From IMG/VR virus record IMGVR_UViG_3300010938_000950, positions 145,767 to 209,766 of that record: DNA of 64,000 nucleotides. One strand, given 5' to 3'. Shown piece by piece: positions 103 to 63,829 of the stretch; the first letter of the stretch is position 1; every line of letters starts with the position of its first letter. The notes beneath the pieces were generated by a model. That model ran no database searches. It was given only the letters and a program-made list of their open reading frames with translations, and was not told where the DNA came from. A program made the translations under genes and the position numbers.

Positions 103-744
103 ATGGATCTCGCCAACATCATCGCGCTCGTCTCGTCCGCTCACGTCGATCCCACCACCGCGCCCGAAGTGAACGTGGACCCCGAGGTGACCGAGACGGT
201 CATCGGCCGCAATCTCCCCAAGCCGGAGCGCGGCAGCAAGAAGCAGGCCAGCAACCAGGCCGCTCCCATTCACAGCAAGGCCAGTGCGCCGGGTGTGGCA
301 CTCAACACCGGCGACAAGCTCGACGCCAAGTCCTTCATCCTCGCCATGCGCAACGCTGGCAAGCGGTGGGTCGAGGGCAAGGGCCAGGTCTTCGACAAGA
401 ACCACGAGCGCAACGACCAGATCCAGGCCATCGCCTCGTACACCGGGTACGACAATGCCCGAGACTTCGGCAGCCAGCAGCAGGCGGCCATGGCCCAGGC
501 GCAGCGCGAGCTGCGAGGCGGTGTCACCCCTGGTCCGACCAGGGAGGAGAAGCGGGCTGCCGAGCGCAGCATGTCGGGCTACGTGGCAGGCATGCCGCTC
601 CCGGCTCAGAAGCTCCTCGCCAATCTCAGGGCCAGGGAGCAAGCGGCGGCCGAGGCGATGATCGACGCCAAGACCCCGGAGGAGAAGGCTGCGCACAAGC
701 AGCTCCTCGACACCATCCGTAAGGCCATCGACGAGCTGGTCTGA
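103..744 (+). CDS. Hypothetical protein
   Basis: 213-aa ORF, GGAG SD, GC3-rich codons, followed by a terminator; contains the 11-mer in frame (APIH). Confidence 0.8.
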   Translation: MDLANIIALVSSAHVDPTTAPEVNVDPEVTETVIGRNLPKPERGSKKQASNQAAPIHSKASAPGVALNTGDKLDAKSFILAMRNAGKRWVEGKGQVFDKNHERNDQIQAIASYTGYDNARDFGSQQQAAMAQAQRELRGGVTPGPTREEKRAAERSMSGYVAGMPLPAQKLLANLRAREQAAAEAMIDAKTPEEKAAHKQLLDTIRKAIDELV

Positions 745-15884: not shown

Positions 15885-16229
15885 TCATGGCAGAGCAGCC
15901 GGTCGATCTGAGCCCCTTCCTCAAGAGGGGGCTCCACTACCGGGTGGCGGACTTTCTGTACCGCCATCTCTTCCAGCATGTGGACAACTTGCTGGAGCGT
16001 CTCAGTGCATGGTCCACTCGCAAGTGGTGCGAGGACAACAGCCAAGCGCTGCGCGACCTGAATCGAAAGGGTCGCTGACAAGGAATCGGGTTTGGTGTAA
16101 GAGTCTAGCCCTTGGCATCGGACCAAGGGAGGACGAACCCAAGAGCACACAAAACACCTATGCTGCCAGGGCGATAGCGATTCAAACTGGTAGCTCCCAT
16201 TCACCGCAACCGCAACCCGAGGAACAACG

Positions 16230-18320
16230 ATGAGCAACCGCGCTACCAACATCCTGCTTCGCCACAACTTCATCCACATCCCTGCTCCGAGCAGCGATAC
16301 GGTGGTGGGTGCCAAGGAAGCTCTTGCCACCATCCTGATGAACCTGACCTACTACGGGAAGGCTCTCAGCCAGGAGGCATATGCCAAGCTCCTTCACCTG
16401 ACGGGTGATGACTTGGTGTCCTGGTGGCAGGTTGTCGAGGCTGAGCTGAAGGACATCACGGGAGCCTCTCGCAAGATTGGCGATTTCGTGGTCTACAAAA
16501 ACTTCCCCAAGGAGGTTCTGGACAAGAGCGCGGCCGAATACTGGCTCCCGCAGATCCTCATGTACTGGGGATTCCCGAAGGAGCTGTTCACCGAAGAGGT
16601 GGTGCCCCGTCCGAAGATGGACGAGCAGCCCAAGTGTACGGTGCTTCATCTCGCCAAGGATGGTCAGCTCCAAAACATCTTCACGTCCTACCTCAAGTCC
16701 CCGGCTCGCTGGAAGGACCATGAGCTGGCTGACGTTCTCTTCCTGGTGGATTGGTTTGCCGTCGATCTCGGCAAGCTGGCCTTCAAGGAGAACATGGTTC
16801 TCCTGGCTTCGGCTCTCATCAGCCGTGGCAAGGACATCAAGGTCAACACGGCCACCGACGTTCTCCGTCTGGCTGTTGGTCTCAGCAACGGTGATGTCTC
16901 TCTCCGTGAGAAGAGCAAGCTCCGTTCCTTCAAGAAGAAGGAACGTCGATTCCTGCTCAACATGCTGGAGAGCTGCACCAATCTGACGGAGGACGTGGCT
17001 CGTAGGCCCGAGCTGTTCAAGCGTCTTCTCCACTCTCTTCACCCCGGCGACTACAAGCGGTCCTATCCGCAAGTCCTCAAGGTGATGAACAGTCTCTATC
17101 ATGACGAGTTGGAGACTTTCAACTCTCAGGTGGAGGGCCTTCTGCTCGACAAGGACGAGCGAGTGCTGAAGCTTCTGGCTGGTCGCCCTGGCGACTTCCG
17201 AAGGCGCCTGGTCCACACGGTCAATCTCTTCGGTAAGAAGGCGGCTTCTGCCTTCACTTCTCAGGAAGTGCTGAGCAAGCTGACGGTCGGGCAGATCGTG
17301 GCTACTCGTTCCTTCCTGAACACGGTCAACGAGCGTACGGCTCGCATCTTCCCGCCCAAGGGGAACTGGAGTCGTGCTCAGTTGGCAGAGCCCCGCACGG
17401 TTGCCAAGACTCATCTCAAGGCCATCGACAAGGCGCTCGGTGCTGCGCTGGCTGCACGTGTTCCGGCAGTTGGTGTGCTCGATCCTGCCACCAGCAAGAT
17501 CAAGCTGCCCAACAACGGAGAGGAAGGTCCCTACACTCGTGGAACGGTCTTCCCGATTCCCGAGGGAACGGACTTCATCCGCACGGCATCCTATTGGGAT
17601 GTCAGCCAGTCTCGCTACACCTGGTTCGACAATGGTTGGAACTTCTTCGACCAGAACTGGAACCCGGTTGGTGCTTGCTGTTGGAACCAGCCCTTCTTCC
17701 CCAGCCGAGGGTACAGCTACTACAGCCGAGATCAGAAGCCTGCCAAGGATACTGGAGCGGTCTTCTCTGGAGACCCGACCATTGCCACTGGTAAGGCTGC
17801 CCAGATGATCGACCTGTATCCCGAGAAGCTTCGTGCTCAGGGAGTCAGGTATGCCGTGTGGAGCGTTCTCTGCTTCTCTCGGTTGACGTTCAACCAGGCG
17901 AACGATGTCTTCGCTGCCTTCCAGTGGGGCAAGGATGCCAACAAGGGCAAGCTTTTCGAGCCGGCCCGTTGTCAGCTTGCCATCCCGCTCAAGGGTGACC
18001 AGCTCACCAAGTACGTCGTTCTCATCGACCTCGATAAGAACGAGATGATCTACTTGGATGCTGGCCTCAAGAGCAGCACCAGCAGCGCAGCCATGAACGG
18101 CCCTCTTCTCCAGAAGACGATGCCGGCGTTCTTGGAGTACATCAACTCCCTCCCCTCCGTTCACGACTTGTTCCGTGAATCGGTGGACGCATCCAGCAAG
18201 ACCAAGATTCTCTACTCCGACAAGGATGCAGAGTTGAAGGGTGAGCCGGCCTATGTTTTCCGCCCGGAGAACAAGGAGAACAAGTTCAAGCCGGTGGACC
18301 TGAACGGTCTTCTCGGATGA
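16230..18320 (+). CDS. Large TerD-domain family protein of the type carried by large phages and Firmicutes
   Basis: 696 aa; family motifs TATDVLRLAVGLSNGDVSL, SFKKKERR, LHPGDY, RPGDFRRRL, IFPPKG, RGT..P, SGD, FEP in a TerD-like C-terminal region (recognised from memory). Confidence 0.75.
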   Translation: MSNRATNILLRHNFIHIPAPSSDTVVGAKEALATILMNLTYYGKALSQEAYAKLLHLTGDDLVSWWQVVEAELKDITGASRKIGDFVVYKNFPKEVLDKSAAEYWLPQILMYWGFPKELFTEEVVPRPKMDEQPKCTVLHLAKDGQLQNIFTSYLKSPARWKDHELADVLFLVDWFAVDLGKLAFKENMVLLASALISRGKDIKVNTATDVLRLAVGLSNGDVSLREKSKLRSFKKKERRFLLNMLESCTNLTEDVARRPELFKRLLHSLHPGDYKRSYPQVLKVMNSLYHDELETFNSQVEGLLLDKDERVLKLLAGRPGDFRRRLVHTVNLFGKKAASAFTSQEVLSKLTVGQIVATRSFLNTVNERTARIFPPKGNWSRAQLAEPRTVAKTHLKAIDKALGAALAARVPAVGVLDPATSKIKLPNNGEEGPYTRGTVFPIPEGTDFIRTASYWDVSQSRYTWFDNGWNFFDQNWNPVGACCWNQPFFPSRGYSYYSRDQKPAKDTGAVFSGDPTIATGKAAQMIDLYPEKLRAQGVRYAVWSVLCFSRLTFNQANDVFAAFQWGKDANKGKLFEPARCQLAIPLKGDQLTKYVVLIDLDKNEMIYLDAGLKSSTSSAAMNGPLLQKTMPAFLEYINSLPSVHDLFRESVDASSKTKILYSDKDAELKGEPAYVFRPENKENKFKPVDLNGLLG

Positions 18321-18459
18321 CGGACCAGCAATATCGGGCGGCCAGATTATATCTGGCCCTCCGATACCTGGTGGTTGATTCAAGTCAGCCACCAAGTTTA
18401 GGAGAGTGTCTCCTATACGAGATGTGCTTTGCATACAAGCAAAAGCACGAGTGAGTTTC

Positions 18460-18605
18460 GGTAGGCCATGATGGTTCTTCCTTCTAAATCAATGGGAAAA
18501 CAGAGCCATCGCTTTCCTACCAATGTGGGCCATAGAGGGTCTTCCTTCTAATTCAAGGCATCAGCCCAAAAGGCTGATAAAAAACAGACCCTCTGCTTTC
18601 CCACA
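18460..18605 (+). ncRNA. Tandem pair of a covarying structured RNA motif (units 1-2)
   Basis: Stem-CCAT-9bp stem-TCCTTCTA-N-AAAAC-stem-GCTTT-stem; units 18460-18521 and 18524-18605 have different but fully complementary stems. Confidence 0.8.
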
Positions 18606-18624: not shown

Positions 18625-20207
18625 ATGTGCATCCAAGACAAAGAACCACGAGAAGAATTGAAGCGACTGCCAGAGATGCTCAAGGAGCACGGCTGGTCGG
18701 CATCTCCCATTCACTGCAACTACTCGGCAACAAGCCCCGGTGATTGGTTGCAAGGTTCTTCGGGGCCAACCGAAACTCATCAAGGCATCACCCTTTTCAC
18801 TGGTACAGCCTTTCAGGTTATCGCCAGAGAAGAAGACCTGAAAGTCAGGGTGGGGTGGCCCGGACAGATGACAACAACCTATACCTGTTTCACCGCAGAA
18901 CAGGTAGTCTGGTGGCTCAGTAAGCTGCTGCCACTGGCTGACAAAGAAATTGCGGAACGGAGGAAGAGCAATGACTTCTGATGAGAAGGAGCTGGCAATT
19001 CAGACCATCATTGGATTCATCCTGGATCCAATGCAAAAGGACAGAGTGCCCGTTTCCGACAGGCAGAAAGCCAATCTGCAAGACAGCATCAGTCGGGACC
19101 TGGACATCAACGGCTGGACTTTGCAGCAATGCAAAGATTCCGAAACCATGCCGGCTGGTGAGTTGATTCTCAACTTCCCCGAGACAACTCATACGATGTT
19201 CAGCATCTACCGCGCTTCCAAGATGTCGTGAAGACTTACCTATCATCCTCATTGGTCGATCGGTTCCAGGTGGAACCTCCGGGTAGTTGAGGGATGGGCT
19301 AGGCAGGCGGCCACGGCCTAGAGGCAAGTGATCATAGCCTAACGAATGAGGGTGTCAAGGAGTGAGATAACGTCAATCTCCAGTGCTCAGTGGCGAGACG
19401 CACCCGCCGATTTACGGGAACCTAGAGTCGTGGGACGTATGGGCAATAGCCCGGAGGTTGGCCACCCGTGGTTCGAGTCCACAAGGTTCTCCCATTCACA
19501 GGATGCCCATTGCAGGGCATGCGGAACGCCGATGCGAAAACTCGCAGTCATCGCCCCAAGGTATCCAACACTACTAGAAAGAATTCTGATGGGGATCACC
19601 TGCATCGGATTCTGTCAAGGCAACACGCCCGAGAACGTTCATAACTGTCATAGGTTTTGTATCGCTAACAAGCAATCATTACCTAGCAGAGATGAAACCA
19701 AGCAACTCGCTCCTTGAATTGGAAGCGTTGGCTCTCAAACTTTACATCGAAGCAGCGGCTGACAATGATTGGTTTTCAATGCTCATCTGTTGGGCCGTTG
19801 TCCTGCGATTGGAAAAACATGCCGGAACAGAAGTTGACGGCTGAGGAAGCCATCACCTATTACTTCATCAAGGCTTGGATTGCTTGGGACGAAGCGTTCG
19901 ACATCCAAGAGTGGATGGAACAGGGATTCAAGTTCAACGAAGCAGACACCAATCTGTATCAAGCGGTTGGGTTGGCTGGGCAGAGATGGCCCTGGGGCTA
20001 CAAGCTGCCGAGGAAACGATGAGAGCCAAGAACGTTTCGGTTTCATTCTACCAGCAAGGCGGAGAGCTTCGTCTCTGGGGAGTGAGTTTCACCCTGAAAG
20101 GATCCTTGCCGACCAAAGACGGCAAGATGGATTCAGCGGCCTACAACAAGAAGTGTCGCGAGATCGAGAAGCTCATTGCTTCCATCGAATTCCCTGACTC
20201 GGAGTAA
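18625..20207 (+). other. Hypothetical ORFs 18625..18981, 18971..19231, ~19818..20022 and 20019..20207
   Basis: + strand ORFs with overlapping stop/start junctions. Confidence 0.55.
19417..19494 (+). ncRNA. Anticodon-less tRNA-like element whose CCA end is supplied by the 11-mer repeat
   Basis: Acceptor GGAACCT/AGGTTCT-C-CCA, T arm GTGG-TTCGAGT-CCAC, GGGC-AATA-GCCC (4-nt loop), long variable arm. Confidence 0.55.
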
Positions 20208-20210
20208 GTC

Positions 20211-20573
20211 ATGAAGCTCATTCTCAATGCCGCTCAGTGCCGTTCGTGTGAGACAATCATCGTCTCCACTCACCGCCATGACTTCCGCACGTGCAAGTGT
20301 GGGAAAGTTAGTGTGGATGGTGGCTTGGAGTACACCAGACGAGTTGGGCAGCTCGACTTGATTGTGGAGCGTTGTGCCTATGTCTGGGATAGGTATTCCC
20401 AGCCCACCGATGCCGCCGGCAAATTCATTGTTTGGAGTCCTGGCGGCAAAACCAATCCCGGAGTCGTCTTTGATTGCAAGGATGATGCCGAGCAGTCAGC
20501 CAAGGAATTGGCTGTCAAGGTTCCGGTCAGTGATTGGTACGTGGCTCAGCTCTCCCACGTCTCGACCCAATGA
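20211..20573 (+). CDS. Conserved phage zinc-ribbon protein
   Basis: NAAQCRSCETIIVSTHRHDFRTCKCGKVSVDGG. Confidence 0.8.
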   Translation: MKLILNAAQCRSCETIIVSTHRHDFRTCKCGKVSVDGGLEYTRRVGQLDLIVERCAYVWDRYSQPTDAAGKFIVWSPGGKTNPGVVFDCKDDAEQSAKELAVKVPVSDWYVAQLSHVSTQ

Positions 20574-33717: not shown

Positions 33718-33871
33718 GTTAGGCCATAGTAATCCTTCCTTCTATATTTGCTAAATAAAACAGGGTTACTGCTTTCCTAACTAAGACGAGCCATGTAGAT
33801 GCATGTTTACACCATGCATTCGCCCTTCCTTCTATACTGCGAACATAAAACAGGGCCTACGCTTACTCGTC
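33718..33871 (+). ncRNA. Tandem pair of the same covarying RNA motif (units 3-4)
   Basis: Units 33718-33781 and 33785-33871 keep CCAT, CTTCCTTCTA, AAAACAG and GCTTW; unit 4 carries an inserted hairpin ATGCATG/CATGCAT. Confidence 0.8.
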
Positions 33872-33985
33872 ACTTTTCAGAGATAGGCCATAGTCTCATT
33901 CACTGAGAATACTATGTGCTTAGTTGTAATGGTAAGTGATATTGCCATTACCCCGGAGGTATGACCATAAGGCGTATCCTCCGTT

Positions 33986-34055
33986 TCCCATCATGGTATG
34001 ACGCCAATTGTGTAGCTACATGGCGTGGGGATGGTTCGATTCCACCCGGTGGGAC
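33986..34055 (+). ncRNA. D-armless tRNA-like element
   Basis: Acceptor TCCCATC/GGTGGGA, T loop TTCGATT, ACGCCA/TGGCGT stem with a 14-nt loop. Confidence 0.5.
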
Positions 34056-34124
34056 TGGCGCCTACAGACACTCTAAGTCCTTTTCCTTCCAGGCAATGTA
34101 GTCTGATGGCGCCTCTATGTTTAT

Positions 34125-34251
34125 CCCCGTACGTATTGGTGCGAGCGTTAGTGCAAGTAATCAGTGTTCTAGAAGCTGATGATGCCAAGAGTCTGCTAGC
34201 GACTCATACGGAGTGAAACTAACTAGCTGGGTTCGAGTCCCAGTGCGGGGT
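34125..34251 (+). ncRNA. tRNA-like element with a 65-nt structured insertion at the anticodon position
   Basis: Acceptor CCCCGTA/TGCGGGG, T arm CTGGG-TTCGAGT-CCCAG, stem GTTAGT/ACTAAC enclosing internal hairpins. Confidence 0.6.
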
Positions 34252-34531
34252 GCCCTTTCCAAAAAGAAAACATGCAACACATCGAAGATCCTCCTCCCTG
34301 TCGTCATTGTGGACGCTGCGTATTCTGCGGACCTCCTTGCTGTGATGGTATGGCAGAGGACATCAAGGCGTGGCAAAACTCTCCAGAATATCTGGAGCTA
34401 GTTCGTAAGCAAAAAGAAGAAGGCAAGCGAGCCAAAGCCGAAAGAAAAGCCGCCAAGAAATTGCGGCGGCAAAAGCAGCTTGCCGAACGAAACAATCCTC
34501 CCATTCACAGCAACCTTCAACCGCAAGAAAA

Positions 34532-50910: not shown

Positions 50911-51402
50911 ATGCCATATAAAAACATTGAAGACCGTCGAGAATGCCTTCGTAAATATCGTAATGAGAACCGCGAGAAGATACGTGAACAAACACGTAAA
51001 CAATCCTTAGCTTGGCAAAAGGCGCATCCTGAAGCCGGGCAAAAATGGAAAGAAGAAAACGCCGAGAAAATCAAAAAGATTGGTCGCAAATCCAATCTCA
51101 AAAAAGTTGGCTGGACAATAGAGGAATTCGATTCAGCGTTTGAAAAACAAAAACAATCCTGTTGGATATGTGGCGTTGAACTTACCAAAGAGAAGGGTTT
51201 TGGTAATACTGCCCATGCAGATCATAATCATACAACGGGTAAAAAGCGTGGTATTCTTTGCACTAAGTGCAATCTAATAGAAGGGCACATGAATAAATGT
51301 GCGATACCACCAAAAGAATTTCTCGAAAAACTTTTAGAATACTATAAGGTATTCGATACGGAAGGTAATCAAGATGAACTTCATGGCATGGCCGGAGATT
51401 GA
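50911..51402 (+). CDS. Free-standing endonuclease VII-like homing endonuclease
   Basis: QKQSCWICG...HADHNHTTGKKRGILCTKCNLIEG; basic N-terminal region; overlaps the RNA ligase start. Confidence 0.85.
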   Translation: MPYKNIEDRRECLRKYRNENREKIREQTRKQSLAWQKAHPEAGQKWKEENAEKIKKIGRKSNLKKVGWTIEEFDSAFEKQKQSCWICGVELTKEKGFGNTAHADHNHTTGKKRGILCTKCNLIEGHMNKCAIPPKEFLEKLLEYYKVFDTEGNQDELHGMAGD

Positions 51403-52375
51403 ATCGTTCCATAACATCAGGAAATATACTTCACCAGCCGCTCATCCTGAAATCTTGAACGGCAATACTATTGTCGATTATAGACCCAAGGTTAAGTTGC
51501 ATGGTACGAATGCGGCTGTTCAAGTCCATGAGGATGGAAGCATTGTGTGTCAGAGTCGCGAGTCTATTATCACCCGTGAAAAAGACAATGCTGGCTTTGC
51601 TAAGTGGGCACACTCCCAACCTAATTGGGATCTAGCCAAAGGCCATATTCTCTATGGCGAGTGGTGTGGACCTGGTATTCAGAAGGGTGTTGCCATTGCC
51701 CAAATTCCTCGCAAGGTGTTCGCTATCTTTGCAGCGCGTCCTTTGGATGGCAGCGACAAATTGATTGTTGAACCGGACGAGCTTCGTGTTTTGATCGAGA
51801 ATACTAAGTTCAATATTCCTGACGTGTATGTTCTTCCCTGGTACAACGAAGGGCTGGAAGTTGATTGGTCTGAGACAAGTGAAGAGCTAACCAAGGATGT
51901 TAATCTAATCAACGAGTGGGTTAGTGCTGTGGAAGCTAATGATCCATGGGTCGAAGCGACCTTCAATGTCAAGGGGACTGGAGAAGGTTTGGTTTTCTAT
52001 CCTCGTTCAGATGAACATCTCGGCTTCACTAACTTCAATAACTTGGTATTCAAAGCCAAGGGAGAAAAGCATAAGAACATTGCCACGGCTAAGCCTGCGC
52101 AAGTGGATGCAACTGCGGCGGCCAGCATCGATGCGTTCGTGGCTATGGTTCTTACCGAAGCTCGTCTGGAGCAAGGTGCTACCAAGGTGTCTGCTGATGG
52201 TGCACTTACCTATGACATGAAGAACACAGGTAAGTTCGTCTCCTGGGTAAGTGCAGATGTAGAGAAAGAAACTCAGGATGAGCTAGCCGCCAGCAATCTC
52301 ACCTTCAAACAGGTGCAGAAAGCCATCAGTGATAAGGCTCGTGCCTGGTATCTTGCCAAAGCTAAGGAGCTATAA
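51374..52375 (+). CDS. RNA ligase (Rnl2 family)
   Basis: KLHGTN, YGEWCGPGIQKG, FAIF, EGLV and FKAK nucleotidyltransferase motifs. Confidence 0.88.
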   Translation: MNFMAWPEIESFHNIRKYTSPAAHPEILNGNTIVDYRPKVKLHGTNAAVQVHEDGSIVCQSRESIITREKDNAGFAKWAHSQPNWDLAKGHILYGEWCGPGIQKGVAIAQIPRKVFAIFAARPLDGSDKLIVEPDELRVLIENTKFNIPDVYVLPWYNEGLEVDWSETSEELTKDVNLINEWVSAVEANDPWVEATFNVKGTGEGLVFYPRSDEHLGFTNFNNLVFKAKGEKHKNIATAKPAQVDATAAASIDAFVAMVLTEARLEQGATKVSADGALTYDMKNTGKFVSWVSADVEKETQDELAASNLTFKQVQKAISDKARAWYLAKAKEL

Positions 52376-59701: not shown

Positions 59702-59776
59702 GGCCCCATCATCTAGTGGTTAGGATATATGGCCTTCACCCATAGTACAGGGGTTCGAATCCCCTTGGGGTCACCA
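59702..59776 (+). tRNA. tRNA-Glu(TTC)
   Basis: Full cloverleaf GGCCCCA...TGGGGTC-A-CCA, D loop AGTGGTTAGG, TATGG-CCTTCAC-CCATA, AGGGG-TTCGAAT-CCCCT; C at position 33. Confidence 0.92.
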
Positions 59777-62689: not shown

Positions 62690-63829
62690 ATGACTGACTG
62701 GAATCCCCAAATTGTTCGAATTGAAAAGGTAGAGAAGCATCCGTATGCAGATGCATTGGATATTGCTACCGTGCTCGGGGACTATCCGGTCATCGTCAAA
62801 CGAGATGAATATAAAGAAGGCGATCTAGCTGGCTATATTCCCATCGATTCTATTGTTCCTGATACAGAGCAATTCCATTTTCTATGTCCTAAGATTACTG
62901 AGAAGTATGAAGAGGTTGAGGACAACGAGATTGTAACTAAGACTCGTACGCTCGGCCCTAAGTTCCCAGTTGGTTCTGTTCCTGAGAAAAATCGTATCAT
63001 TAAAGCAAAGAAAATTCGTGGAATCTATTCGCAAGGAATGCTCGTTTCTATCCAGAGCCTTCCATTGGTTCCTGCCGGAGATATGAAAATCCTAGGATGG
63101 TTTAATCCTGGCGATACAATTACAGAGCTTCTTGGACTCAAAAAATGGGAAGAGGAAGAAGAGGAAAATCTTCCTGGTCTTAAAAAGACCGGCCGCAATA
63201 ATGAGAAAGCACCTCAAGGATGGTCTATTCCTCATTATGATATTGACTCAGTGCGCAAGGTAGTTCGTCTTCTTCAGCCCGGAGAAGAGATTGTTCTTAC
63301 TGAAAAGATTCATGGTTCCAATGCCGGATTCTCACATGATGGCACACGCCTATGGGTAAAGTCTCGTAACTTCTATAAGAAGCAAGATGAAGAAGATATG
63401 TGGTGGGATATTGCTATCCGCTACGAATTGGAGAAGAAGCTTTCTCAATATCCTGGTCTTGTTTTCTTTGGGGAAGTTTACGGTCAAGTAAAAAAATTCC
63501 GATACGATACTGTTATCGAAGGCGGGCGTCTGCTCACACGTATACGTTTCTTTGATGTATGGGATACTAAGAAGGGACGATACGTTGACTATGATGATCG
63601 TATTAAGATCATTACAGATGCTGGTCTGGATACCGTTCCAGAGTTGTACCGTGGTCCATGGCTTGGAAAGGAACAAATGTATCCTTTTGCTGAGGGCTTG
63701 ACAACCCTAGGTGGCAAACATATTCGTGAAGGTTGGGTTCTCAACACCGTCAAAGAAAGGTTTGAGCCCGAACTAAATTCCCGTATGCAAGTAAAGTTGG
63801 TGGGGGAAGGTTATAACCTTCAGAAGTAA
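62690..63829 (+). CDS. RNA ligase, DRB0094 family
   Basis: N-terminal HPYADAL/KIRGIYSQG OB-like region; EKIHGSN, FGEVYG, FFDV, REGWV and KLV motifs. Confidence 0.9.
   Translation: MTDWNPQIVRIEKVEKHPYADALDIATVLGDYPVIVKRDEYKEGDLAGYIPIDSIVPDTEQFHFLCPKITEKYEEVEDNEIVTKTRTLGPKFPVGSVPEKNRIIKAKKIRGIYSQGMLVSIQSLPLVPAGDMKILGWFNPGDTITELLGLKKWEEEEEENLPGLKKTGRNNEKAPQGWSIPHYDIDSVRKVVRLLQPGEEIVLTEKIHGSNAGFSHDGTRLWVKSRNFYKKQDEEDMWWDIAIRYELEKKLSQYPGLVFFGEVYGQVKKFRYDTVIEGGRLLTRIRFFDVWDTKKGRYVDYDDRIKIITDAGLDTVPELYRGPWLGKEQMYPFAEGLTTLGGKHIREGWVLNTVKERFEPELNSRMQVKLVGEGYNLQK

What the first reader, a model, noticed from the sequence alone, without database searches (positions are those of the whole stretch)
16230..18605. 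TerD-family giant protein followed by a tandem, covarying RNA motif: candidate undescribed ribonucleoprotein system
Seen: 140 nt after the stop of the 696-aa TerD-domain gene lie two units: GGTAGG-CCAT-GATGGTTCT-TCCTTCTA-N10-AAAAC-AGAGCCATC-GCTTT-CCTACC and TGTGGG-CCAT-AGAGGGTCT-TCCTTCTA-N30-AAAAC-AGACCCTCT-GCTTT-CCCACA. Stem sequences differ while pairing is fully kept. The internal loop (CCAU/GCUUU) and loop boxes (UCCUUCUA, AAAAC) are invariant, and the variable part of the loop can hold an extra hairpin. Established: Ter-type stress systems are genomically linked to RNA-binding and repair components such as Ro/TROVE with Y RNAs. Inference: the conserved single-stranded boxes are a protein-binding site and this protein is the likely partner. 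I cannot assign the RNA to a named family.
Basis: partly seen in the sequence, partly recalled or inferred. Interest (0 to 1): 0.88.

Follow-up and report, generated by a model that had tools for sequence, protein, structure and literature searches.

The report
Small RNA array paired with TerD-fold protein
A ~65-nucleotide structured RNA that is in no RNA database sits, in one to six copies, right beside the gene for an unnamed ~700-residue protein in more than a hundred large phages and bacteria, which points to an undescribed RNA-protein particle built like the Ro60/Y-RNA particle and linked to transfer-RNA genes and RNA repair.

Summary
The window holds four copies of one RNA motif, all on the + strand: 18460-18521, 18524-18605, 33718-33781 and 33785-33871. 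Each has a 6-bp stem, a conserved internal loop (CYAU/GCUUU), a 9-bp stem, and a loop that starts with an invariant UUCCUUCUA.

Across 133-189 distinct relatives, 95-96% of pair cells stay paired and 13 of 15 pairs show compensatory changes. Rfam 15 has no family for it.

The 696-aa gene has no Pfam hit. Its predicted structure is a basic alpha-solenoid followed by a TerD-fold beta-sandwich.

The motif lies within about 0-200 nt of homologues of this gene:
- 16 of 16 viral loci
- 67 of 80 metagenome loci
- 29 of 31 bacterial genome loci
- 3 of 3 loci of a distant cellular subfamily
- weakly, next to five very distant phage homologues

By contrast, 847 kb of unrelated viral DNA gave only two orphan copies, both inside tRNA arrays.

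One myxobacterial copy carries a YrlA-type tRNA-like domain in its variable loop. Neighbouring genes repeatedly include tRNAs, tmRNA, a CCA-adding enzyme, RlaP and Thg1-like genes.

The best reading is a new Y-RNA-like ribonucleoprotein built around a non-TROVE protein. Physical binding and function are untested.

The parts
16230..18320 (+). Gene for the 696-aa protein (stop codon included). Residues 1 to about 420 form a basic alpha-solenoid, about 436-618 a TerD-fold beta-sandwich, and 619-696 a small alpha/beta tail.
   Evidence: ORF. No Pfam hit; matches phrog_33734, of unknown function. AF2 model pLDDT 78. TerD fold by Foldseek. N-terminal pI 9.6. 2354 cluster representatives at E <= 1e-3.
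17535..18083 (+). Coding part for the TerD-like beta-sandwich (about residues 436-618). It holds the invariant FSGDPT..G..Q.ID motif.
18334..18364 (+). 13-bp hairpin just after the stop codon, conserved with compensatory changes in close relatives. Possibly a 3' stabiliser or processing site; there is no T-run after it.
   Evidence: RNAalifold on 7 relatives; fold; no terminator call on the + strand.
18402..18424 (+). Sequence-conserved block (GAGTGTCTC-TTGTAYGAGATG type) about 35 nt upstream of unit 1. Candidate promoter or processing signal for the RNA array.
   Evidence: Alignment A8. The role is an inference only.
18460..18521 (+). RNA unit 1.
   Evidence: 84.7 bits with R1 and 72.8 bits with R2; fold z = -4.3.
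18524..18605 (+). RNA unit 2, with an extra hairpin in the variable loop.
   Evidence: 81 bits with R1 and 68.9 bits with R2; fold z = -5.7.
33718..33781 (+). RNA unit 3, an orphan copy 15 kb from the gene.
   Evidence: 84.5 bits with R1 and 74 bits with R2.
33785..33871 (+). RNA unit 4. Its inner stem is split by an inserted hairpin and its 3' internal loop reads GCUUA.
   Evidence: Read from the sequence; fold; partial model match of 24 bits.

Best explanation
The locus encodes a two-part module: a protein and its partner small RNA.

The protein is about 700 aa. It has a basic alpha-solenoid, a TerD-fold beta-sandwich and a short C-terminal domain.

The RNAs are 60-80 nt. Their 5' and 3' ends pair to form P1 (6 bp, closed by two G-C pairs). 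Next comes a conserved asymmetric internal loop (C-Y-A-U opposite G-C-U-U-U, containing a U.G or C.A wobble). Then P2 (9 bp, ending in conserved C-G and U-A pairs). The large loop opens with the invariant UUCCUUCUA and continues into a variable stretch that can hold a hairpin or a whole tRNA-like domain.

Shown here: the RNA fold is under selection. It is read from the gene's strand in all phage loci. The RNA gene travels with the protein gene across phages and many bacterial phyla.

Inferred: the units are cut out of a longer transcript the way tRNAs are. The invariant internal loop and loop box are the protein's docking site. The variable loop is an adaptor for other factors, as in Ro60/Y RNA.

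More weakly inferred, from neighbouring genes: the particle acts on tRNA or other stable RNA, in surveillance, repair or protection during phage-host conflict. The TerD-like domain may act as a small-ligand sensor (Ca2+ or a nucleotide derivative).
For: Structure: 95.3%, 95.9% and 95.6% of cells are paired in three alignments. 13, 12 and 13 of 15 pairs have double changes. The covariation score is 0.62-0.90, against 0.17-0.21 when shuffled and at most 0.20 when partners are slid. G.U pairs are frequent and the reverse strand scores about 9 bits, so the folded molecule is + strand RNA. The UCCUUCU box is present in 188 of 189 distinct units. The loop-closing pair is wobble-isosteric: U.G 112, C.A 13, C-G 1.

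Linkage:
- 16 of 16 viral loci, all hits on the gene's strand and next to the gene
- 63 of 80 metagenome loci with model R1, plus 4 more with R2; all 150 hits are on the gene's strand
- 26 of 31 genome loci, plus 3 more with R2
- 3 of 3 loci of a subfamily only 25-30% identical: Leptospira, Gimesia, Flavobacteriales
- weak but correctly placed arrays next to homologues in phages WXIN, Weasels2, LpeD, RpAliso and RcXuper
- only two orphan copies in 847 kb of other viral DNA

Independent RNA gene rather than a UTR element: orphan copies exist (window 33.7 kb, L032, L077). Three bacterial loci carry it on the opposite strand. Units abut tRNAs by 2-6 nt, and a tmRNA lies about 80 nt upstream of one unit.

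Y-RNA-like modularity: the L165 unit carries a YrlA tRNA-like domain (RF02553, 44.3 bits, E 9e-9).

Context: a tRNA nucleotidyltransferase is the next gene in RpAliso and RcXuper. An RlaP gene is nearby in XacN1. A Thg1-like gene and an AAA_33 kinase are adjacent in Gimesia. The window has two RNA ligases.

Protein: the N-terminal domain is basic, pI 9.6.
Against: No binding, expression or processing data exist. All evidence is comparative.

The protein has no recognised RNA-binding domain. Its solenoid matches nothing significantly: the best PDB hit is E 0.38 and Ro60 is E 1.1.

Neighbouring genes in bacterial chromosomes are not conserved, so the functional context rests mainly on phage loci and one Gimesia locus.

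13 of 80 metagenome loci and 2 of 31 genome loci gave no hit. Several of these have cut flanks, but some may truly lack the RNA.

The alignments were fitted to the model's structure, which favours pairing. The slid-partner control argues against this being the cause.
Confidence: 0.7

Rival explanations
1. Cis-acting regulatory element. The hairpins are part of the gene's own 5' or 3' UTR, and the protein binds them to control its own mRNA (autoregulation or stability).
For: The units lie in the untranslated flank of the gene, on the same strand, in all phage loci and most bacterial loci, often 6-50 nt from the start or stop.
Against: The element can sit on either side of the gene. Three bacterial loci carry it on the opposite strand. 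Orphan copies occur 15 kb away in the window and inside tRNA arrays in L032 and L077. Arrays reach 6 units with tRNA-like spacing. One copy carries a tRNA-like domain.
Confidence: 0.1
2. Base-pairing small RNA. The exposed pyrimidine tract UUCCUUCU is a seed that pairs with purine-rich targets (Shine-Dalgarno-like GAAGGA, or a conserved cellular RNA). The protein would act as its chaperone or effector.
For: The box is single-stranded in every fold and almost invariant. It is complementary to SD-like sequences, which I read from the sequence and did not test.
Against: The distant clades change the box to UUACUUCUA, CAUACUUCUA or UUUCAUUU. That weakens pairing to any universal target and fits co-evolution with the protein better. 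No target was identified.
Confidence: 0.1
3. Type III toxin-antitoxin-like pair. The tandem RNA repeats would neutralise a toxic protein that also processes them.
For: Tandem RNA units lie next to a protein gene on the same strand, often upstream.
Against: The units are diverged rather than near-identical. Bacteria mostly carry a single unit. The protein has no ToxN/AbiQ-like domain and no PADLOC match. Orphan copies sit in tRNA arrays.
Confidence: 0.04
4. Self-cleaving ribozyme or processing 'punctuation'. The units would cut polycistronic RNA arrays, and their link to the protein gene would be incidental.
For: Conserved nucleotides concentrate in an internal loop and a terminal loop. Units abut each other and tRNAs by 2-6 nt.
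Against: There is no match to any ribozyme family in Rfam. The tight link to one protein family across phyla is not expected for a stand-alone ribozyme.
Confidence: 0.04
5. DNA-level element, such as a recombination site, replication site or repeated promoter/terminator, rather than an RNA.
For: It is repeated and intergenic.
Against: G.U pairs are common (for example UG 50 of 133 at one position), and they would be A.C mismatches on the other strand. The model is strongly strand-specific. No promoter or terminator consensus is found on the + strand.
Confidence: 0.02

Closest known systems
Ro60 (Rsr, TROVE) with Y RNAs, especially bacterial and phage YrlA (Rfam RF02553; Chen et al. 2014, PMC4201824)
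   Same: In both, a small RNA's paired 5' and 3' ends form a conserved protein-docking stem, and a variable module sits in the loop. The RNA gene lies beside the protein gene, usually on the same strand, and often in more than one copy. Both occur in bacteria and in phages. Both have links to tRNA biology and RNA-repair genes. One relative here (L165) literally carries the YrlA tRNA-like domain.
   Different: The protein has no TROVE or vWA domain by sequence. By fold, Ro60 is only a non-significant hit. The C-terminal domain is TerD-like instead. The docking stem lacks the GNCGAAN0-1G Ro60 motif and has its own signature (GGCYAU ... UUCCUUCUA ... GCUUUCC). The window copies have no tRNA-like domain and do not match RF02553 or RF00019.
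TerD-family proteins (tellurite-resistance/stress proteins; PDB 2qng, 2qz7, 3ibz)
   Same: The beta-sandwich fold of residues about 436-618 matches (Foldseek probability 1.0, TM 0.65-0.69). There is a remnant of the SGD-x-TG ... (I/V)DL motif. NCBI names relatives 'TerD family protein'.
   Different: TerD proteins are about 190-aa single-domain proteins encoded in ter operons. Here the fold is one domain of a 700-aa protein with a large solenoid. There is no Pfam TerD hit. No ter genes were seen among the neighbours examined. No RNA partner is known for TerD, as far as I could find.
NCBIfam NF041916, MXAN_6230/SCO0854 family RING domain-containing protein
   Same: It is clearly homologous over the second half of the solenoid and the TerD-like domain (E 1e-56, 193 bits).
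   Different: The score is far below the family cut-off (600 bits), and the profile's first 385 or so positions, which include the RING, are not matched. Whether that family also has the RNA was not tested.
Type III toxin-antitoxin systems (ToxIN and similar)
   Same: A tandem array of short structured RNAs lies next to a protein gene.
   Different: Here the repeats are diverged, the protein is large with no nuclease fold, bacteria carry single copies, and orphan copies sit in tRNA arrays.
tRNA genes in phage tRNA arrays
   Same: The units have the same size class, paired 5' and 3' ends and 2-6-nt spacing, and are interleaved with tRNAs and tmRNA.
   Different: There is no cloverleaf. They are not called by ARAGORN or by Rfam's tRNA model.

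Membership tests
Y RNA / YrlA (Rfam RF00019, RF02553) | Match to the Rfam covariance model at the gathering score | tested here: not met
   No hit at E <= 10 over the window units. Only the inserted domain of the relative L165 matches RF02553, at 44.3 bits against a gathering score of 69.
Y RNA / YrlA (Rfam RF00019, RF02553) | Ro60-binding motif GNCGAAN0-1G (vertebrate GGUCCGA) near the 5' end (PMC4201824) | tested here: not met
   The 5' strand reads GG-C-Y-A-U followed by a variable stem.
Y RNA / YrlA (Rfam RF00019, RF02553) | Encoded near a TROVE-domain Ro60 gene, on the same strand | tested here: not met
   The partner gene has no TROVE hit in Pfam and no hit to Ro60 chains in the PDB sequence search.
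Y RNA / YrlA (Rfam RF00019, RF02553) | tRNA-like domain (T arm, closed acceptor stem, D arm) | tested here: not met
   Absent from the four window units. Present in 1 of 189 distinct relatives.
Y RNA / YrlA (Rfam RF00019, RF02553) | The 5' and 3' ends pair into a conserved stem, and a variable module sits in the loop | tested here: met
   variable inserts.
TROVE / Ro60 proteins | TROVE (HEAT-repeat ring) domain by sequence profile | tested here: not met
   No Pfam hit for 23 members at E <= 10. The profile against PDB sequences finds no Ro60.
TROVE / Ro60 proteins | Ring-shaped alpha-solenoid fold similar to Ro60 | tested here: inconclusive
   For the N-terminal model, Ro60 (9nfa_A) is rank 7 at E 1.1, probability 0.30, TM 0.24. 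Nothing is significant.
TROVE / Ro60 proteins | C-terminal vWA domain with a MIDAS site | tested here: not met
   The C-terminal part is a TerD-like beta-sandwich.
TerD family (Pfam TerD) | Match to the Pfam TerD profile | tested here: not met
TerD family (Pfam TerD) | TerD beta-sandwich fold | tested here: met
   Foldseek hits to 2qng, 2qz7 and 3ibz at E 6e-5 to 2e-4, probability 1.0, target TM 0.65-0.69.
TerD family (Pfam TerD) | Ca2+-binding acidic motifs (GD-x-x-TG ... GDDE; this definition is from my own knowledge of TerD structures) | tested here: inconclusive
   FSGDPTIATGKAAQMIDL keeps the SGD..TG and IDL elements but lacks the acidic cluster. No residue-level structural alignment was made.
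TerD family (Pfam TerD) | Located in a ter operon (terZABCDE and similar) | tested here: not met
   None of the neighbours examined is a ter gene.
NF041916 RING_SCO0854 | Whole-protein score at or above the curated cut-off (600 bits), with the N-terminal RING | tested here: not met
   193 bits. The best stretch covers profile positions 386-712 of 842.
Type III toxin-antitoxin | Near-identical tandem RNA repeats and a ToxN/AbiQ-type endoribonuclease | tested here: not met
   The stems of the units differ. No PADLOC or Pfam match.
tRNA / tmRNA | Cloverleaf recognised by ARAGORN or by Rfam RF00005/RF00023 | tested here: not met

The most novel reading that the evidence does not exclude
This is a second, Ro60-independent class of Y-RNA-like ribonucleoprotein. 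An alpha-solenoid/TerD-fold protein docks on a dedicated ~65-nt RNA, and the RNA's variable loop recruits other factors, in one lineage through a tRNA mimic. The system would be used by many bacterial phyla and multiplied into arrays by large phages, to survey, repair or shield tRNA and other stable RNAs during phage-host conflict. The TerD-like domain may couple this activity to a small-molecule or Ca2+ signal.
Probability: 0.45. Interest if true: 0.9.

Novelty: new variant of a known kind. Interest (0 to 1): 0.82.

Why it matters
Both partners are unannotated, yet common. The protein family has 2354 cluster representatives at 50% identity. It is found in huge phages, in cultured phages of Xanthomonas, Rhodobacter, Ruegeria, Mycolicibacterium, Rhodococcus and Lactobacillus, and in actinomycetes, myxobacteria, cyanobacteria, rhizobia, Leptospira, Planctomycetota and Bacteroidota.

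If the RNA binds the protein, three things follow:
- It would assign a partner, and a direction of study, to a large 'hypothetical' / 'TerD family' protein family.
- It would give the TerD fold a first link to RNA.
- It would show that the Y-RNA design (docking stem plus exchangeable module, including the tRNA mimic) evolved or was transferred onto a different protein.

It would also add a new RNA family to the annotation of phage tRNA regions. Several hosts are ordinary laboratory organisms, so the idea can be tested directly.

Tried and rejected
- Rfam, at gathering and at E <= 10 thresholds, over both loci and the whole window: only tRNA-Glu at 59702.
- Pfam, PADLOC and PDB sequence searches of the protein and of its profile: nothing. 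PHROGs gave only phrog_33734, of unknown function.
- blastn of the locus against phage genomes: only a 123-nt match in XacN1.
- First collection pattern (CTTCCTTCTA..AAAACAG): too loose, mostly chance matches.
- Second collection pattern: I mis-specified it, giving a gap of 9-11 nt where 8 nt is correct. It returned four non-homologous matches and wasted a scan.
- TROVE hypothesis for the N-terminal domain: a separate AF2 model and Foldseek gave no significant hit.
- Conserved neighbours in bacterial chromosomes: none found.
- Literature searches for the box sequence, TerD with RNA, YrlA-like RNAs in phages, and SCO0854/MXAN_6230: nothing relevant. Two Aravind-lab papers that might describe the family are not held.
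- A complementarity of the box to the SRP RNA or to anti-SD-like sequences occurred to me from memory. I dropped it because the distant clades change the box.
- L125 was left out of the protein alignment because its homologue has an in-frame stop.
Full report
**1. What is in the window**

The + strand ORF 16230..18320 encodes 696 aa.

Unit 1 starts 139 nt after the stop codon and runs 18460-18521. Unit 2 follows after 2 nt and runs 18524-18605.

Both units read: P1 (6 bp), CCAU, P2 (9 bp), UCCUUCUA, a variable stretch, AAAAC, P2', GCUUU, P1'. Their stem sequences differ and pairing is kept.

Single-sequence folding recovers this structure, with z-scores of -4.3 and -5.7 on the + strand.

Two more units lie 15 kb downstream at 33718-33781 and 33785-33871. 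In the last one, P2 is interrupted by an inserted hairpin.

The box pair occurs 4 times in the window against 0.02 expected.

Covariance models built from three units (R1) and later from 150 relatives (R2) were run over all 64 kb with filters off. They find these four units and nothing else of note. The reverse strand scores about 9 bits.

**2. It is a real, selected RNA structure**

Model hits from related loci were aligned and the pairs were counted. The results for three alignments were as follows.

| Alignment | Distinct units | Cells paired | Pairs with changes on both sides | Covariation score |
|---|---|---|---|---|
| A4 | 40 | 95.3% | 13 of 15 | 0.88 |
| A6 | 33 | 95.9% | 12 of 15 | 0.62 |
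| A7 | 133 | 95.6% | 13 of 15 | 0.90 |

For comparison, the score is 0.17-0.21 after shuffling, and no shuffle in 500 reached the observed value. It is at most 0.20 when the 3' partners are slid by 1-3 columns.

These alignments were fitted to the model's structure, which favours pairing. The slid-partner control and the many pair types per position (up to six) argue that the signal is real.

G.U pairs are frequent, so the folded molecule is the + strand transcript and not DNA.

Among 189 distinct units, 188 keep UCCUUCU.

The nucleotide before P2 and the nucleotide after P2' behave as a wobble pair: U.G 112, U-A 20, C.A 13, C-G 1. This kind of isosteric constraint is typical of a recognition element.

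AAAAC is conserved only among close relatives.

**3. It is not a known RNA**

Rfam 15 gives nothing at either locus, even at E <= 10. The whole-window gathering scan gives only tRNA-Glu at 59702.

Literature searches found no description.

**4. The protein**

There is no Pfam hit for it or for 22 relatives. There is no significant PDB sequence hit. PADLOC gives nothing, and PHROGs gives only a family of unknown function.

An AF2 model (pLDDT 78) shows a helical N-terminal part of about 420 residues, a beta-sandwich at about 436-618, and a small tail.

Foldseek places the sandwich with TerD structures 2qng, 2qz7 and 3ibz: E 6e-5 to 2e-4, probability 1.0, target TM 0.65-0.69.

In BFVD there are full-length structural relatives in Lactobacillus phage LpeD and in Campylobacter phages.

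The invariant FSGDPT..G..Q.ID segment resembles the TerD signature but lacks its acidic cluster.

NCBI names some relatives 'TerD family protein', and JGI names some 'stress response protein SCP2'.

NCBIfam shows clear but sub-threshold homology to the MXAN_6230/SCO0854 RING-domain family: 193 bits against a cut-off of 600.

The N-terminal part is basic, with pI 9.6.

Modelled on its own (pLDDT 80), the N-terminal part matches nothing significantly. The list is made of generic solenoid and PPR proteins. Ro60 (9nfa_A) is at rank 7 with E 1.1, although it has the best TM in the list at 0.24.

So 'TerD-family' holds at fold level, and a TROVE relationship is neither shown nor excluded.

The family is large, with 2354 representatives at 50% identity at E <= 1e-3.

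**5. The RNA and the gene travel together**

| Set of loci | Loci with a unit beside the gene | Notes |
|---|---|---|
| Viral loci anchored on the protein, including Xanthomonas phage XacN1 | 16 of 16 | All 43 hits on the gene's strand; nearly all in the flank just before the start or after the stop |
| Metagenome loci | 63 of 80 with R1, plus 4 with R2 | All 150 hits on the gene's strand; arrays of 1-6 units; 2-15 nt between units; nearest unit 6-200 nt from the gene |
| Bacterial genome loci | 26 of 31, plus 3 with R2 | Dactylosporangium, Virgisporangium, Myxococcota, cyanobacteria, rhizobia, Aquabacterium, Chloroflexota; usually one unit, 6-40 nt from the gene; opposite strand in three loci |
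| Second cellular subfamily, 25-30% identical | 3 of 3 | Leptospira bandrabouensis, Gimesia, a Flavobacteriales MAG; unit 7-69 nt from the gene; 45-53 bits |
| Very distant phage homologues (22-28% identity) | 5 of 5, weak hits | WXIN, Weasels2, LpeD, RpAliso, RcXuper; hits fall in the one large gap next to the gene, on its strand; same two-stem fold with variant boxes UUACUUCUA, CAUACUUCUA or UUUCAUUU |

As a control, 847 kb of unrelated viral DNA was searched. That DNA had even been pre-selected for carrying the box pair. It gave two strong hits, both orphan units in huge-phage contigs. Neither fetched locus (7-8 kb of these 359- and 456-kb contigs) encodes the protein.

**6. It behaves as a separate small-RNA gene**

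- The orphan units sit inside tRNA arrays. In L032 the unit starts 2 nt after tRNA-Lys.
- In L126 the order is tRNA-Thr, tRNA-Pro, unit, unit, gene.
- In L127 the order is tmRNA, unit, gene.
- The unit can lie on either side of the gene.
- Three bacterial loci carry it on the opposite strand.

Together these argue against a purely cis-acting UTR element. They suggest tRNA-like excision from a precursor, which is an inference.

In the window, the 139-nt spacer between the gene and unit 1 holds two conserved features. One is a hairpin after the stop codon that covaries among close relatives. The other is a sequence-conserved block upstream of unit 1. Their roles are unknown.

**7. The Y-RNA parallel**

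In the myxobacterial contig L165, one unit (108-240, minus strand) carries a T arm, a closed acceptor stem and a D arm between the UCCUUCUA box and P2'. This insert matches Rfam YrlA positions 23-86 of 114, at 44.3 bits and E 9e-9 in a 400-nt search. That is below the gathering score of 69.

YrlA is the bacterial Y RNA. Its tRNA-like module sits on a Ro60-docking stem, and YrlA genes lie within 4 kb of Ro60 on the same strand (PMC4201824).

Here the same module sits on a different docking stem, which lacks the GNCGAAN0-1G motif, next to a different protein.

The design is therefore the same: docking stem plus exchangeable module. Family membership fails on every defining feature that could be tested.

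**8. Functional context**

- In RpAliso and RcXuper the gene lies among tRNAs, and the next + strand gene is a tRNA nucleotidyltransferase; in RcXuper one small opposite-strand ORF lies between.
- In XacN1 an RlaP-type RNA-repair nucleotidyltransferase lies two genes upstream.
- In Gimesia an AAA_33 kinase and a Thg1-like enzyme lie directly upstream.
- The window itself encodes two RNA ligases, at 51374-52375 and 62690-63829.
- Bacterial chromosomal neighbours are otherwise variable.

This points to tRNA or stable-RNA maintenance, but weakly.

**9. Verdict**

The finding is real.

It is untested biochemically.

It works most like Ro60/Y RNA but is not a member of that family.

My confidence levels are:
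- a genuine, selected RNA family genetically coupled to this protein family: about 0.95
- a physical ribonucleoprotein: about 0.7
- a role in tRNA/RNA surveillance or repair: about 0.35

Noticed in passing
window 33872-34531 (notably about 34030-34050 and 34245-34275): A 660-nt stretch with no ORF follows the orphan units. It holds two T-arm-like hairpins (GGUUCGAUUCC, and CUGGG-UUCGAGU-CCCAG followed by a possible acceptor strand). ARAGORN calls an intron-containing tRNA-Met-like gene only at relaxed thresholds. Rfam finds nothing, and blastn against phages finds nothing.
   Followed up: partly
window 51374-52375 and 62690-63829; tRNA-Glu at 59702-59776: There are two RNA-ligase genes (Pfam RNA_ligase; the second also has an OB-fold domain) and one tRNA. 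This part of the phage genome is rich in RNA-repair functions.
   Followed up: partly
window 18334-18364 and 18402-18424: The spacer between the gene and unit 1 contains a covarying 13-bp hairpin and a sequence-conserved block shared with close relatives. The whole 308-nt intergenic stretch folds with z = -10.
   Followed up: partly
window 16182-18434 (-): A 750-aa ORF is open on the strand opposite the 696-aa gene, over its whole length. All homologues support the + strand gene, so this is probably a mirror ORF.
   Followed up: no
window 19298-19343 (-): A weak model hit (E 0.2-1.1): a hairpin with GGCUAU ... GCCUGCC flanks but without the UCCUUCU box. It is at chance level.
   Followed up: no
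L129 9173-9260; L125 2775-2777: A huge-phage relative encodes a tRNA with a CUA anticodon (amber-suppressor type; ARAGORN labels it Pyl). Another relative's homologue of the protein has a single in-frame stop. Stop-codon recoding in some of these phages is possible.
   Followed up: no
L259 502-1690 (Gimesia sp. MAG): An AAA_33 kinase and a Thg1-like (3'-5' polymerase) gene pair lies directly upstream of the RNA unit and the protein gene. This is a cassette associated with tRNA 5'-end repair.
   Followed up: partly
L256 249-2082 and L257 59-1979 (phages RpAliso, RcXuper): About 1.8-1.9 kb without annotated genes lies between a tRNA and the protein gene. The model finds only 2-3 units in the last 600 nt or so. 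The rest may hold further RNA genes.
   Followed up: no
window 20211-20573: A small gene with Pfam DUF7695. Most other neighbours of the locus have no family at all.
   Followed up: no
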